The translations under genes and the position numbers were made by a program. Of a stretch of 23,609 nucleotides of DNA, positions 9,958 through 13,800 are shown piece after piece. Numbering within the stretch: the first letter of the stretch is position 1; the number at the start of each line of letters is the position of its first letter. Under the pieces are notes generated by a model that was not told the origin of the DNA, did no database searches, and worked only from the letters and a program-made list of their open reading frames with translations. Location: positions 690,253 through 713,861 of the forward strand of contig JAWQFM010000019.1 of the NCBI GenBank assembly GCA_033442325.1. Reading direction: 5' to 3'. This DNA comes from Salpingoeca rosetta (taxonomy: Eukaryota; Protista; Choanoflagellata).

Positions 9958-10801
9958 TTACGACGCGATGACGGCGATGCTGGCGAGGGCGTTGGAAAAG
10001 TTGTCACTCGCAGACACTAGAGCAGTGATGGGAGCCAGGATAGTGGGTGTGAGCGGGAAGTGAATGAGAACAGTGCGAGAGAAAACCGCACCGAGATAGA
10101 TACAGCACGTGGGGTCTTATACACGCACACACACATGTGCACACACACACACATGTACACACACGTGCACACACACATGTACACACACACACACACGTTC
10201 ACAAGTTGTACCTGTGAGGTCGCTGAGGTTGTATTGGTCATCGCCCAAGAGCTCGTTGTTGTCCTGTGGCACACATGCATATGGATGTAAGTACGACGAT
10301 GATGCCTTGGCAGACAATGCACGTTGGGTCAATGGCATTGCACACGCCACTCGGCATGACGCGCGCGCACAGGCGTTCGACCACACGCACCCTGATCTCG
10401 ACGCTTTGGATGCTATCCACTCCACTCATCTCCAATCGGAACGTCATAAAGTACAGGTAAGACGCCTCCTTTGGCCTGCACAGCCAAGGTTGCGTGGGTG
10501 AAGCGGCGGTAGTGAGAGAGTGTGTGTGTGTGAGAGAGAGAGTGTGTGTGAAAGTGAGTGTGCTCTGGGCGTGGGCAAGGGCGCTGGGCTGACGAGGACA
10601 CACACACACACACACACACACACACACACACACACACACATACACACACACACACACACACACACACACACACACACACACACACACACCAGCACCAACA
10701 CACACATGCACATTCACATACCTTTGCACGACGCAGCGGTACATGTCATCTGCCCGTTCGATGGTGATGAACCATTGCTCGTCTGCTCCTGCTGCTGCTG
10801 C
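9958..10801 (-). CDS. MYDGF: MYDGF (myeloid-derived growth factor / UPF0556)-like protein, 5'-incomplete
   Basis: Exons ~10801-10722, 10475-10391, 10263-10212, 10016-9958 splice in phase to [91 protein letters not shown]. This aligns by eye with recalled human MYDGF GGTNEQW...FTCTIWRPQGKSYLYFTQFKAEVRG...FKAELSKLVIVA. No start codon or signal-peptide exon was found. Confidence 0.8.
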
Positions 10802-13800
10802 TTCTCCTTCGACTGCTTCGATCCCGGCACAAGCCGCTTGATGGATTCCCACAGCCCACTGTGCAAGTGCGTATTGGAGACGGTTTGACGAATGAACAAT
10901 GCTTGTCACACATGACACACGTGGCGCACACACACACATGGCACTGCTGTCCTCCAGCAGCTTTGCAGCCTCCATCCCAGGCCGTCGTTCAACTGACACG
11001 GACACGAACGTGCCGCTCAGGTCGTGCACGAGGATAACGGGTGCATCGTGGGGCGAGTGCGAATCAGCGCCCTTCACGCGCGAAAGCGCAAAGATGTCTG
11101 AGGACCTGCCCTCTCGCAAGGACAGCTGCCACGCCCCGGGGGTCGCCTTGAGCTGGAAGTAGCCCAGGTTCGCCATCACCAGCGTGTCGTACATCGAGCC
11201 ATGCGTGCGCGTGCCTGACAACAACCAAGGGTTGGGGAAAAGGAGGGGGACAGTGAGAACGTGAGTTGTGATGCATGGCTGCGGCTACAAGCACAGCGTG
11301 GCAGTACTATGACACAACCAACACGGGCGCGGCCAGCATTAGCACCACCACCACCACCATTAATGATGTGTGAACGCCCCCTTGCGTTATTCATTGCGCG
11401 CACCGCCGCATCGACCGCACATGAAGCAACGCGCAACTTTATACACTCACCGAGTTCCAGCTGGAGGCCGGCTGTTGGGCGGCGTGTCGTCGCTTCAACG
11501 CACGAGCCCTCGACCGCCATGTGCTCTGTAGTGGTCACCGGGCAGATAAAGGTGAGTTTGCCCAGGGGCGGGGGGAGGAGGTGCAAAAGCGGGATGACGA
11601 CAGGAGTTGCCGCAAAGAGCAAGGAAACGTGGACCCAGCCTCATGCACATGCCCGCACGCAAACACAACACAAAAACGCAACGCAACAACACAACGCAAC
11701 ACAATACATGAAACCAACCAACCAACCACTACCTCACCGAGCTCAAAGACCGCGTGCACGCCGCGCTGGCTGCTCTGAAGGTGGATGTTGTCCAGGTCGT
11801 GCTTCGACTCAACGCTCTTCACCATCCATGATGCTGGCGTCTCCAGGCCAAGCGTAAGCAGCGATGCACGTGGGAGGTTGGCAAACACAGCGCGCGGGCC
11901 AGGGTCGAGCGTGCCATCATCGGAGAAGGTGATCGCGGGCATGACTGCACGGTAAAACCGCTTCACAGGCATCTCGGAGACGCGTGGCGTTGGGTTGAGC
12001 AGCAGCGTGATGTGCACGGCGGTGTGCTGCATGAGGAGCGACAGCGCCGGGCCCATGCGCTGGCCGCCGTCAGAGGCAGGGTCCACAATCGCATACACCT
12101 TGGCATGTGCACACAGCAGCGAAGATGAGAAAGCGGCGGTGACGTGCCGTGATGATCGCGGCAGCAGGTGAGCAATCAGCTGCAATGCGATGATAGGAGC
12201 ATACCCCCAAGACCCAACCAACCAACCAAATGACACAACATCACAAACGAAACAAAGTGCCCACCTGGTGAGGTGTGCGGCCAGACTGCCCAACGAGCGC
12301 AGATGTGAGCTCAAGTGCAGAGTGTGTTGTGTCGAGTCCTTTGAAGAGAGACAGATCAACGCGCCGCACTTGCTGGCCCTGCTCTGCGCTCTCCGCAGCA
12401 CGCATACGGCTGCGACTCAACACTGCGCACACGCCAACAACAACATCGTTGCGGTATTGCAGGGCACGGGCATCATCGTCGCCGCTGCCGGCTGCGTACG
12501 CTGGGGGTGTGGCCAGCTGCGTCTGGTCGATGTGGCGCACGATTGCACGCGTGTTGATGCTGTCGCCATGACGCTTGTCCAGCTGGTGGTAATCGGCAGC
12601 ACGCAGGGCACGATCCGTCATGGGGCCTGTTTTGTGGTGGTGGTAGTGGTAGGTGGTTGGTTGAAGTGAGCGAGTATGACCGACAAAGGTACTCGCCCTC
12701 TCATGCGTGCACAGGTACACAAAGACAAGCAATCACACACACACACACACACACACACACACACACACACACACACACACACACACACACACACACACAC
12801 ACACAAGCAACCACACACACACAAGCAACCACACACACACAACCACACACACAAGCAACCACACACACAAGCAACCACACACACACACAACCACACACAC
12901 AAAACACACACACACACAACCACAAAACACACCGCACCACCCCCACGAACCAAAGACGTGGCCATTGAGTATGACGGTGGTGGCGGCAGGCGGAAGGCCA
13001 AACGCTTCGATCATACTGCGCTTGCTTGCAAGCAATGATGAGAACGAATCTTCGTCCTCCTTCACCTTGGCCATCACGTCCGCCCACGCCTTGACGCCCA
13101 CAACCGTCTGGCCAAGCGCATTCGAAACGGCGTCGCCAGCCAGCACGCGCTCCAGCACCTTCCCTGCAACACCAAGCGCCTTGCTTGCAGGCACATATCG
13201 CGCAACTGCCTGCAAGTACGTCTCGAGTTGCTGCCCCGGCGTGTCGCGGGCGCCGCCGTGGAGAATGGCGACGCGAAGCTTCGACGTGCTCAGTTGGCGC
13301 CGCAGAAGCTCAAACGCCGACAGCTGGCCATCGCGTGTGTCAAGGTCCACCACCAGCCAGTATGTCATCGGCTTGACAGAGGGGTGTGTCTCCGGCTTGG
13401 TCGTGTACGCAACGTGCGCGAGCAGCTTGTCTGCTGGGTGCTCAGGGTCGGCCGGCTGCGCCACGTGCAAGTGGGATGGGGAGGTGAGGAGCGAGGGCAG
13501 CACGCGGGACGAGACGCCCTGCTTCATGAAGAAGTCCAACACGTCACTGTGGTCGGAGAGCCAGCCGTAGTACACGGCACGCTGAATGGCGGGTAGCGTG
13601 CTGGTCATTGCTGTGTGCACCTGCGACAGCACCTATCGCGGACATGAGGAGAGGCGAAGGAGAACGAAAAGAGCGGTGCATGTACGTATGTTAGCAAGGC
13701 GGTGCACAAGGCGCAGGAAGGCTGGCAGGAAACACACGCATACGCACACACAATACGCAAACAATACAAACGCACAAACAATACACAAACAATACACAAT

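What the first reader, a model, noticed from the sequence alone, without database searches (positions are those of the whole stretch)
10722..10858. UGGT loses its catalytic GT24 domain and switches into MYDGF within one exon at a (CAG)4 tract
Seen: in one frame the exon starts [23 protein letters not shown], which matches the recalled pre-catalytic linker of human UGGT2 (GLWDSIK...KKEKDVLNIFSVASGHLYER). No NIFSVASGHLYER or other GT24 sequence follows before the opposing WNK gene. From the same repeat (10801-10789) a shifted frame reads [11 protein letters not shown]..., which is MYDGF-like. Two genes thus meet at a 12-13 nt CAG/GCA repeat, with ~300 aa of UGGT and the MYDGF 5' end missing. Possible explanations: (a) assembly misjoin or removed scaffold gap, which is plausible given the NDOR1 lesions; (b) a real microhomology deletion; (c) a split UGGT with GT24 encoded elsewhere, leaving a stand-alone non-catalytic misfold sensor.
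Basis: partly seen in the sequence, partly recalled or inferred. Interest (0 to 1): 0.8.

Follow-up and report, generated by a model that had tools for sequence, protein, structure and literature searches.

The report
Catalytic-domain-less UGGT fused to MYDGF remnant
In the public Salpingoeca rosetta reference genome, the only UGGT gene found (the ER enzyme that re-glucosylates misfolded glycoproteins) stops just before its catalytic domain and runs, out of frame, into the back two-thirds of a MYDGF gene; this is most likely a real deletion that the public annotation hides behind an implausible 23-base intron, but no reads could be checked.

Summary
The window is one whole contig of the Salpingoeca rosetta reference (GCA_000188695.1, scaffold GL832976.1). 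It has N-gaps only at its two ends, so the junction lies mid-contig.

On the minus strand, 15 clean UGGT exons (TRXL1-4 plus beta-sandwich; 17703-10938) lead into exon 10858-10722. That exon reads the UGGT linker up to the (CAG)4 tract at 10800-10789. From there a shifted frame reads MYDGF/UPF0556, which continues in three more exons to 9958.

- No GT24 sequence exists anywhere in the contig.
- Other choanoflagellates (H. balthica, S. infusionum, S. urceolata) and a related environmental contig carry GT24 directly after this linker.
- The public gene model (PTSG_07405, XP_004990905.1, UniProt F2UIL6) already shows UGGT N-terminus plus UPF0556. It gets an open frame only through a 23-nt "intron"; the other 18 introns are 79-324 nt.
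- With normal splicing the product is a 1308-aa UGGT lacking the catalytic domain and HDEL, ending in a 34-residue out-of-frame tail.

Best reading (about 0.6): a real deletion at CAG microhomology. About 0.15: an assembly artefact. Whether GT24 lies elsewhere in the genome is untested.

The parts
10938..17703 (-). UGGT exons 1-15: signal-peptide-like N-terminus, TRXL1-4 and beta-sandwich domains, ending ...[12 protein letters not shown]. All introns are GT-AG and 96-324 nt long.
   Evidence: Exact spliced mapping of P0185; Pfam PF18400/18401/18402/18403/PF06427; collinear with P0032 and P0033.
10859..10937 (-). 79-nt GT-AG intron whose donor sits in a short (TG)n run. Removing it keeps the UGGT frame. 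Retaining it, or using a donor 4 nt downstream, puts the UGGT exons in the MYDGF frame.
10802..10858 (-). UGGT-derived half of the junction exon: the pre-catalytic linker (I)[19 protein letters not shown].
   Evidence: Aligns to P0032 residues 1238-1249. The same linker motif is present in P0182, P0183, P0001 and P0003.
10789..10801 (-). GCAGCAGCAGCAG tract, read QQQQ in the UGGT frame and AAAA in the MYDGF frame: the junction and its microhomology.
   Evidence: and direct reading.
10722..10788 (-). MYDGF-derived half of the junction exon ([23 protein letters not shown] in a frame shifted by one base). In the UGGT frame it reads as an out-of-frame tail.
10750..10772 (-). The 23-nt GT..AG 'intron' of the public gene model PTSG_07405, which shifts the UGGT frame into the MYDGF frame. 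Probably an annotation device and not a real intron.
   Evidence: the other 18 introns are 79-324 nt long.
10391..10475 (-). MYDGF exon ([28 protein letters not shown]). With the whole junction exon spliced normally, the UGGT frame stops here at TGA 10446-10444.
   Evidence: PF10572 E 2.5e-7.
10212..10263 (-). MYDGF exon (DNNELLGDDQYNLSDLT).
9958..10016 (-). Last MYDGF exon (VSASDNFSNALASIAVIAS, stop TAA at 9960-9958). It has no xxEL ER-retention signal.
   Evidence: The retention signal is conserved in nearly all MYDGFs (PMC6901522).

Best explanation
The junction is real genomic sequence of the S. rosetta reference strain. A deletion of unknown length, with both ends in short CAG/GCA repeats, removed three things: all GT24 exons and the HDEL end of UGGT, whatever lay between the two genes, and the promoter, signal peptide and first ~40 mature residues of a MYDGF gene lying downstream on the same strand.

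What remains is one transcription unit. Normal splicing (79-nt intron out, junction exon whole) gives a 1308-aa protein: signal peptide, TRXL1-4, beta-sandwiches and linker, then a 34-residue out-of-frame tail that stops in the next MYDGF exon. It has no glucosyltransferase domain and no ER-retrieval signal. The remaining MYDGF exons become 3' UTR. The early stop, with two exon junctions downstream, could expose the mRNA to nonsense-mediated decay.

The enzyme function is therefore lost at this locus.

Shown: the anatomy, the absence of GT24 from the contig, the mid-contig position, GT24 in relatives, and the odd 23-nt intron in the public model. Inferred: that the join exists in the cells, that it arose by deletion rather than rearrangement, which splice form dominates, and that MYDGF originally lay downstream.
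For: - The window equals one gap-free contig of GL832976.1; N-runs lie only beyond both ends.
- The assembly is 33x 454+Sanger, built by overlap methods (PMC4054682). These do not join reads on a 12-13 nt match.
- UGGT homology runs collinearly to 10822 and then stops; nothing of GT24 is in the contig.
- H. balthica, S. infusionum and S. urceolata UGGTs and contig L001 carry GT24 directly after the same linker. GT24 is therefore ancestral and was lost here.
- The MYDGF part lacks profile positions 1-40 and any signal peptide of its own.
- The two halves are out of frame, as expected from an accident rather than a selected fusion.
- The public model needs a 23-nt intron against 79-324 nt for the other 18.
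- 20 runs from 8 studies hold the 1-kb stretch. The DNA-like shares (0.73-0.81) are what is left once words overlapping the two microsatellite blocks (~23%) are removed.
- RNA-like runs hold 0.41-0.46, close to the 0.42 expected if all three exons are expressed with the junction exon whole.
Against: - No read or independent contig was seen across 10760-10830.
- Only 17 of 971 word positions span the junction, so the word shares cannot test it.
- DNA-like runs lack 8 of 40 sampled words in 10722-11200 without explanation.
- The 1250-aa UGGT part and the MYDGF exons show no stop, frameshift or broken splice site. That requires a very recent event, or selection, or an intact gene in reality.
- The assembly was hand-edited to close gaps.
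- The original adjacency of UGGT and MYDGF is assumed. Two environmental UGGT loci show no UPF0556 neighbour.
Confidence: 0.6

Rival explanations
1. Assembly artefact. The real genome has a complete UGGT followed by a complete MYDGF, and the reference contig lost the few kilobases between two CAG tracts, through a chimeric clone or read or through manual gap closure.
For: - Both gene halves are perfectly intact, as they would be if nothing had happened in vivo.
- The assembly was manually modified to close gaps (PMC4054682).
- 8 of 40 words in 10722-11200 are missing from DNA-like runs.
- No read-level confirmation was obtained.
Against: - The join is mid-contig with no N.
- Overlap assemblers at 33x do not join on 12-13 nt, and mate pairs from 3, 4, 10 and 40 kb libraries would flag a missing segment of several kb.
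- No excess of missing words in 10300-11300 once the microsatellites are accounted for.
Confidence: 0.15
2. A retained, working non-catalytic protein. The UGGT folding-sensor part is kept by selection without GT24, either alone or as an in-frame UGGT-MYDGF fusion made by intron retention or by a donor 4 nt downstream in the (TG)n run. It would act as a misfold binder or holdase.
For: - About 1250 codons in 16 exons have no lesion and give strong domain scores.
- The deletion removes the catalytic domain cleanly at the linker.
Against: - The canonical splice gives an out-of-frame tail.
- The MYDGF remnant lacks its first ~40 residues, probably including one cysteine of the conserved beta3-beta5 disulfide (PMC6901522), so it is unlikely to fold.
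- No ER-retrieval signal is left in any isoform.
- No other species with this architecture was found.
- Intactness is equally explained by a recent event.
Confidence: 0.12
3. Rearrangement rather than deletion. A reciprocal exchange between CAG tracts of UGGT and MYDGF, by translocation or inversion, left this UGGT-N::MYDGF-C chimera here and a MYDGF-N::GT24 chimera (signal peptide plus catalytic domain plus HDEL) elsewhere. That would be a split UGGT.
For: - Nothing shows that MYDGF was originally next to UGGT; two other eukaryote UGGT loci have no UPF0556 neighbour.
- Both breakpoints lie in CAG repeats, which are very common in this genome.
Against: - Among UGGT-length proteins sharing words with the beta-sandwich and linker region, the only S. 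rosetta hit was PTSG_07405. That search could not see a short stand-alone GT24 protein.
- The reciprocal join would also be out of frame.
- A deletion needs fewer events.
Confidence: 0.08

Closest known systems
UDP-glucose:glycoprotein glucosyltransferase (UGGT, CAZy GT24), for example Hartaetosiga balthica EP00055_P017429 (P0032) and human UGGT1/2
   Same: Same N-terminal architecture (TRXL1-4, two beta-sandwiches, linker with the GLWxS motif), collinear over P0032 residues 20-1249; 54% identity in the beta-sandwich.
   Different: It lacks the whole GT24 catalytic domain (PF18404, 266 positions) and the C-terminal HDEL/KDEL. It cannot be a glucosyltransferase.
MYDGF / UPF0556 (PF10572), human MYDGF structures 6svk and 6o6w
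   Same: The remnant matches profile positions 41-118 of 123, including the RPxxxSYLYF core and, in register, the NEQW motif.
   Different: No signal peptide, the first ~40 mature residues missing, no C-terminal ER-retention signal, and no start codon or promoter of its own (PMC6901522).
Public gene model PTSG_07405 (EGD77065.1, XP_004990905.1, UniProt F2UIL6), named UDP-glucose:glycoprotein glucosyltransferase in UniRef
   Same: It is this very locus; all 20 exons map exactly to the window.
   Different: The model presents an in-frame 1355-aa UGGT-UPF0556 fusion by removing 23 nt (10772-10750). Without that device the frame breaks.
Catalytically inactive UGGT relatives and truncated isoforms (yeast Kre5p, recalled from memory; predicted isoform X2 of Genypterus blacodes UGGT2, P0256, 1254 aa without PF18404)
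   Same: UGGT-like proteins without a working or present GT24 domain exist (for P0256).
   Different: Kre5p keeps a degenerate GT24 domain. P0256 is an isoform of a gene that also encodes the full enzyme. Here the gene itself lacks the domain.

Membership tests
UGGT (GT24 glucosyltransferase of ER quality control) | N-terminal thioredoxin-like domains TRXL1-4 | tested here: met
   PF18400, PF18401, PF18402 and PF18403 with E 1e-19 to 4e-50.
UGGT (GT24 glucosyltransferase of ER quality control) | Beta-sandwich region before the catalytic domain (PF06427) | tested here: met
   E 2e-34, profile positions 1-108 of 108.
UGGT (GT24 glucosyltransferase of ER quality control) | GT24 catalytic domain (PF18404) with its sugar-nucleotide-binding motifs | tested here: not met
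   Absent from P0185 and from the whole contig by tblastn with P0001, P0003, P0010, P0032 and P0033.
UGGT (GT24 glucosyltransferase of ER quality control) | C-terminal ER-retrieval signal (H/KDEL-like) | tested here: not met
   Relatives end in HDEL, KDEL or KEDL. All five modelled isoforms here end in other residues.
UGGT (GT24 glucosyltransferase of ER quality control) | N-terminal signal peptide | tested here: inconclusive
   The N-terminus is hydrophobic ([24 protein letters not shown]...), but no signal-peptide predictor was available.
MYDGF / UPF0556 | Complete UPF0556 beta-sandwich domain | tested here: not met
   Only profile positions 41-118 of 123 are matched. With the MYDGF-frame reading the match may reach the NEQW motif, human residue 43 of 142.
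MYDGF / UPF0556 | Own signal peptide and start codon | tested here: not met
   Upstream of the repeat the MYDGF frame reads out-of-frame UGGT linker.
MYDGF / UPF0556 | C-terminal ER-retention sequence (xxEL) | tested here: not met
   The reading ends ...SIAVIAS then stop. The retention sequence is among the most conserved MYDGF features (PMC6901522).

The most novel reading that the evidence does not exclude
The model choanoflagellate S. rosetta has no UGGT reglucosylation activity, yet keeps under selection a 1250-aa stand-alone UGGT folding sensor, possibly joined in frame to a MYDGF fragment by alternative splicing at the (TG)n donor. That would be a natural separation of misfold recognition from catalysis. 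Alternatively, its GT24 domain survives elsewhere as a reciprocal MYDGF-N::GT24 chimera, giving a split UGGT.
Probability: 0.15. Interest if true: 0.75.

Novelty: new variant of a known kind. Interest (0 to 1): 0.4.

Why it matters
UGGT is the only known folding sensor of the calnexin/calreticulin cycle, and S. rosetta is the main experimental model for the closest relatives of animals.

If the deletion is real, this laboratory organism lacks glycoprotein reglucosylation, at least from this locus. That bears on any study of its secretory pathway, its glycosylation mutants and its rosette-matrix proteins. It would also provide a natural GT24-less UGGT for testing what the sensor part does alone.

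The practical point holds either way. The public protein F2UIL6 / XP_004990905.1 is named a glucosyltransferase and shown as a UGGT-UPF0556 fusion, but that fusion rests on a 23-nt intron. Domain-architecture and gene-fusion surveys that use this proteome will inherit it.

If the join turns out to be an assembly error, the reference is missing several kilobases and two gene parts at this place.

Tried and rejected
No read evidence was possible afterwards. The local tblastn database was masked there. Only get_sequence and my own local scripts read that part of the window.
- **Protein searches for S. rosetta ORFs from independent Logan assemblies spanning the junction.** One search was swamped by low-complexity CVCV words. 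One search, restricted to the clean region, found only 67-68% relatives. Exact look-up of the 318-aa genomic ORF found nothing.
- **The search of protein representatives** with the 362-aa exon returned choanoflagellate UGGTs at 34-36% identity but not S. rosetta's own protein. That protein was only found through P0032.
- **A weak GT24-like hit at 9137-9072** (E 0.19) was rejected as the antisense frame of a poly-Q gene.
- **The exon's MYDGF-frame peptide alone** gives no Pfam or PDB hit.
- **The ESM Atlas** gave nothing.
- **Papers:** no paper links UGGT, GT24, MYDGF or PTSG_07405 with S. rosetta. The supplements of PMC4054682 and PMC6322860 do not mention the gene.
- **Synteny:** no Monosiga brevicollis UGGT was recovered. 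Two environmental UGGT loci have GT24 but no UPF0556 neighbour.
- **TARA contig L002** is too short to show what follows the linker.
- **Earlier scan notes** contain nothing on GT24 elsewhere in this genome.
- Nothing in the window looked human.
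Full report
**What is in the sequence.** On the minus strand, exon 10858-10722 has a CAG acceptor and a GTATGT donor.
- In one frame it reads (I)[31 protein letters not shown]...
- In the frame shifted by one base it reads ...[29 protein letters not shown](R).
- The tract GCAGCAGCAGCAG lies at 10801-10789 and is read as Q codons in the first frame and A codons in the second.

**Source of the window.** The best full-length relatives of the upstream exons are choanoflagellate UGGTs: Hartaetosiga balthica P0032 and Salpingoeca infusionum P0033. 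A search with the beta-sandwich and linker region of P0032 returned P0185, 'hypothetical protein PTSG_07405 [Salpingoeca rosetta]' (EGD77065.1, XP_004990905.1, UniProt F2UIL6). P0185 maps exactly onto the window as 20 exons. Its locus in GCA_000188695.1, scaffold GL832976.1, is identical to the window. The window is exactly the stretch between two N-runs, 43 N before position 1 and at least 4094 N after 23609. The junction therefore sits about 10.8 kb inside a gap-free contig. The assembly is 33x 454 plus Sanger, built with Newbler and Arachne HybridAssemble with manual edits (PMC4054682).

**The UGGT part.**
- Exons 1-15 (17703-10938) and the first half of the junction exon encode TRXL1-4 and the beta-sandwich region. 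Pfam E-values are 1e-19 to 4e-50.
- All introns are GT-AG and 79-324 nt long.
- The alignment to P0032 is collinear from residue 20 to 1249 and ends at 10857-10822, GLWDSVKKFVPG against [12 protein letters not shown].
- In P0032 the GT24 domain (PF18404, E 9e-141) starts 27 residues after that glycine and is followed by HDEL. Here the repeat begins 20 residues after it.
- What is missing is therefore the whole catalytic domain and the C-terminus, about 290 residues.
- tblastn with five GT24-bearing proteins finds nothing in the rest of the contig. One weak hit is the antisense frame of a poly-Q gene.

**GT24 in relatives.** P0032, P0033 and the S. urceolata protein P0226 all have GT24. Contig L001 (Logan, SRR14727191) has 68% identity in the beta-sandwich exon. 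It carries the linker ...GLWSSLKSFVSPGSKTHSNG, then an intron, then GT24 exons, all within about 700 nt. GT24 is therefore ancestral in this group and was lost at this locus. The relative's intron lies about where the S. rosetta junction lies. This leaves open that the left breakpoint was near an old exon end.

**The MYDGF part.**
- The annotated protein matches PF10572 with E 8e-13 over profile positions 41-118 of 123.
- Exon 10475-10391 alone matches with E 2.5e-7.
- Human MYDGF (6svk, 6o6w) aligns from its NEQW motif, residue 43 of 142, onward.
- In the MYDGF frame the window reads GADEQW right after the repeat, in register with NEQW. This short piece is not significant by itself.
- The signal peptide and about 40 mature residues are missing, and so is the C-terminal ER-retention signal: the reading ends ...SIAVIAS then stop. 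According to PMC6901522, that signal and a beta3-beta5 disulfide are among the most conserved MYDGF features. The remnant keeps only the second cysteine (YRCVVQ); this mapping is my inference.

**What the locus can encode.**

| Splicing | Product | Ending |
|---|---|---|
| 79-nt intron removed, junction exon whole | 1308 aa | 34 out-of-frame residues after the QQQQ tract ([32 protein letters not shown]), stop at 10446-10444 in the next exon |
| Public model: also removes 23 nt (10772-10750, GT..AG) | 1355 aa | In-frame UGGT-UPF0556 protein |
| 79-nt intron retained | 1389 aa | Open through the MYDGF remnant |
| Donor 4 nt downstream in the (TG)n run (75-nt intron) | 1364 aa | Open through the MYDGF remnant |
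| Donor 2 nt downstream (77-nt intron) | 1290 aa | Third frame, early stop |

- In the first form, two exon junctions lie downstream of the stop.
- A 23-nt intron is far outside the 79-324 nt range of the other 18 introns of this gene. The exon holds several GT and many AG dinucleotides, so a gene builder that allows tiny introns can easily find such a frame fix. I read it as an annotation device.
- No isoform has GT24 or an ER-retrieval signal.

**Real or artefact.**
- In favour of a real join: the mid-contig position, the overlap-based 33x assembly with 3, 4, 10 and 40 kb mate pairs, and a 12-13 nt homology that is too short to mislead such assemblers.
- 20 runs of 8 studies (2013-2025) hold the 1-kb stretch. 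The DNA-like shares of 0.73-0.81 are what remains after removing words that overlap the two microsatellite blocks, about 23%.
- RNA-like runs hold 0.41-0.46. The expectation is 0.42 if the three exons are expressed with the junction exon whole, and 0.37 if the 23 nt were spliced out.
- These shares cannot test the junction itself, because only 17 of 971 word positions span it.
- In 10722-11200, DNA-like runs lack 8 of 40 words without explanation.

I put a real junction at about 0.8-0.85 and an artefact at about 0.15.

**Kind of event.** A simple deletion between two CAG tracts of tandem, same-strand genes is the most economical reading (0.6). It fits the out-of-frame join and the loss of a promoter, a signal peptide and a catalytic domain in one step. 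The perfect state of about 1250 UGGT codons and of the MYDGF exons then means a young event.
- Rival: selection on a non-catalytic sensor or an in-frame fusion (0.12).
- Rival: a reciprocal rearrangement with GT24 surviving elsewhere (0.08).

Whether GT24 exists elsewhere in the genome could not be tested. One search found PTSG_07405 as the only S. rosetta UGGT-length protein, but it could not see a short GT24-only protein.

**Comparison with what is known.** The locus is a UGGT by its N-terminal architecture, but it fails the defining catalytic and retrieval features. It is a MYDGF only in part. The chimera is already in public databases as a gene model. I found no paper that mentions it or discusses UGGT loss in S. 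rosetta. I file it as a new variant of a known kind: a gene truncated and fused by deletion. It has moderate interest and carries a clear correction to the public annotation.

**Constraints kept.** After no letters of 10119-10206 were sent to any search tool. The local BLAST database was masked there. Only get_sequence and my own scripts read them. Nothing in the window looked human.

Noticed in passing
window 10750-10772: The public model PTSG_07405 contains a 23-nt GT..AG intron, while the other 18 introns of the gene are 79-324 nt. It looks like a frame-fixing device of the annotation pipeline. Other S. rosetta models may hide lesions in the same way.
   Followed up: partly
window 1 and 23609 (L004 ends): The window is exactly one contig of scaffold GL832976.1, flanked by N-runs of 43 and at least 4094 bases.
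   Followed up: yes
window 9958-10016: The MYDGF remnant ends ...SIAVIAS then stop, without the xxEL ER-retention signal that nearly all MYDGFs carry. This is either decay or a lineage feature.
   Followed up: partly
window 10802-10858: The UGGT linker peptide ([19 protein letters not shown]) scores just above the Pfam cut-off for the AKAP 'WSK motif' (PF03832, 25.8 bits against a cut-off of 25). Most likely a chance match of a short basic amphipathic stretch.
   Followed up: no
window 2272-9268 (+ strand): A convergent gene with a protein kinase domain (PF00069 at about 4490-5130), very long (CAA)n/(CAG)n tracts and a glutamine-rich tail of about 800 aa. It is annotated as a 1767-aa protein without Pfam hits on record. 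Its 3' end lies about 690 nt from the end of the chimera.
   Followed up: partly
window 17981-21861 (- strand): The NDOR1-like gene (Flavodoxin_1, FAD_binding_1) is annotated as a 596-aa protein, about the recalled length of human NDOR1 (~597 aa, from memory).
   Followed up: no
window 10722-11200: DNA-like runs X15, X16 and X34 hold only 0.80 of the sampled 31-mers of a stretch that has no long repeat. This is unexplained; low coverage or small reference errors are possible.
   Followed up: partly
The exhaustive representative search with a 362-aa exon did not list S. rosetta's own protein (100% identical). The word search found it through a relative. A blank in that library does not mean the source organism's proteins are unannotated.
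   Followed up: no
L002 / L003 (TARA and another ENA metagenome): Marine metagenome contigs encode a UGGT beta-sandwich and linker 67% identical to S. rosetta's, GC-rich and without the 79-nt intron. They probably come from an uncultured close relative that could serve for synteny and dating.
   Followed up: partly
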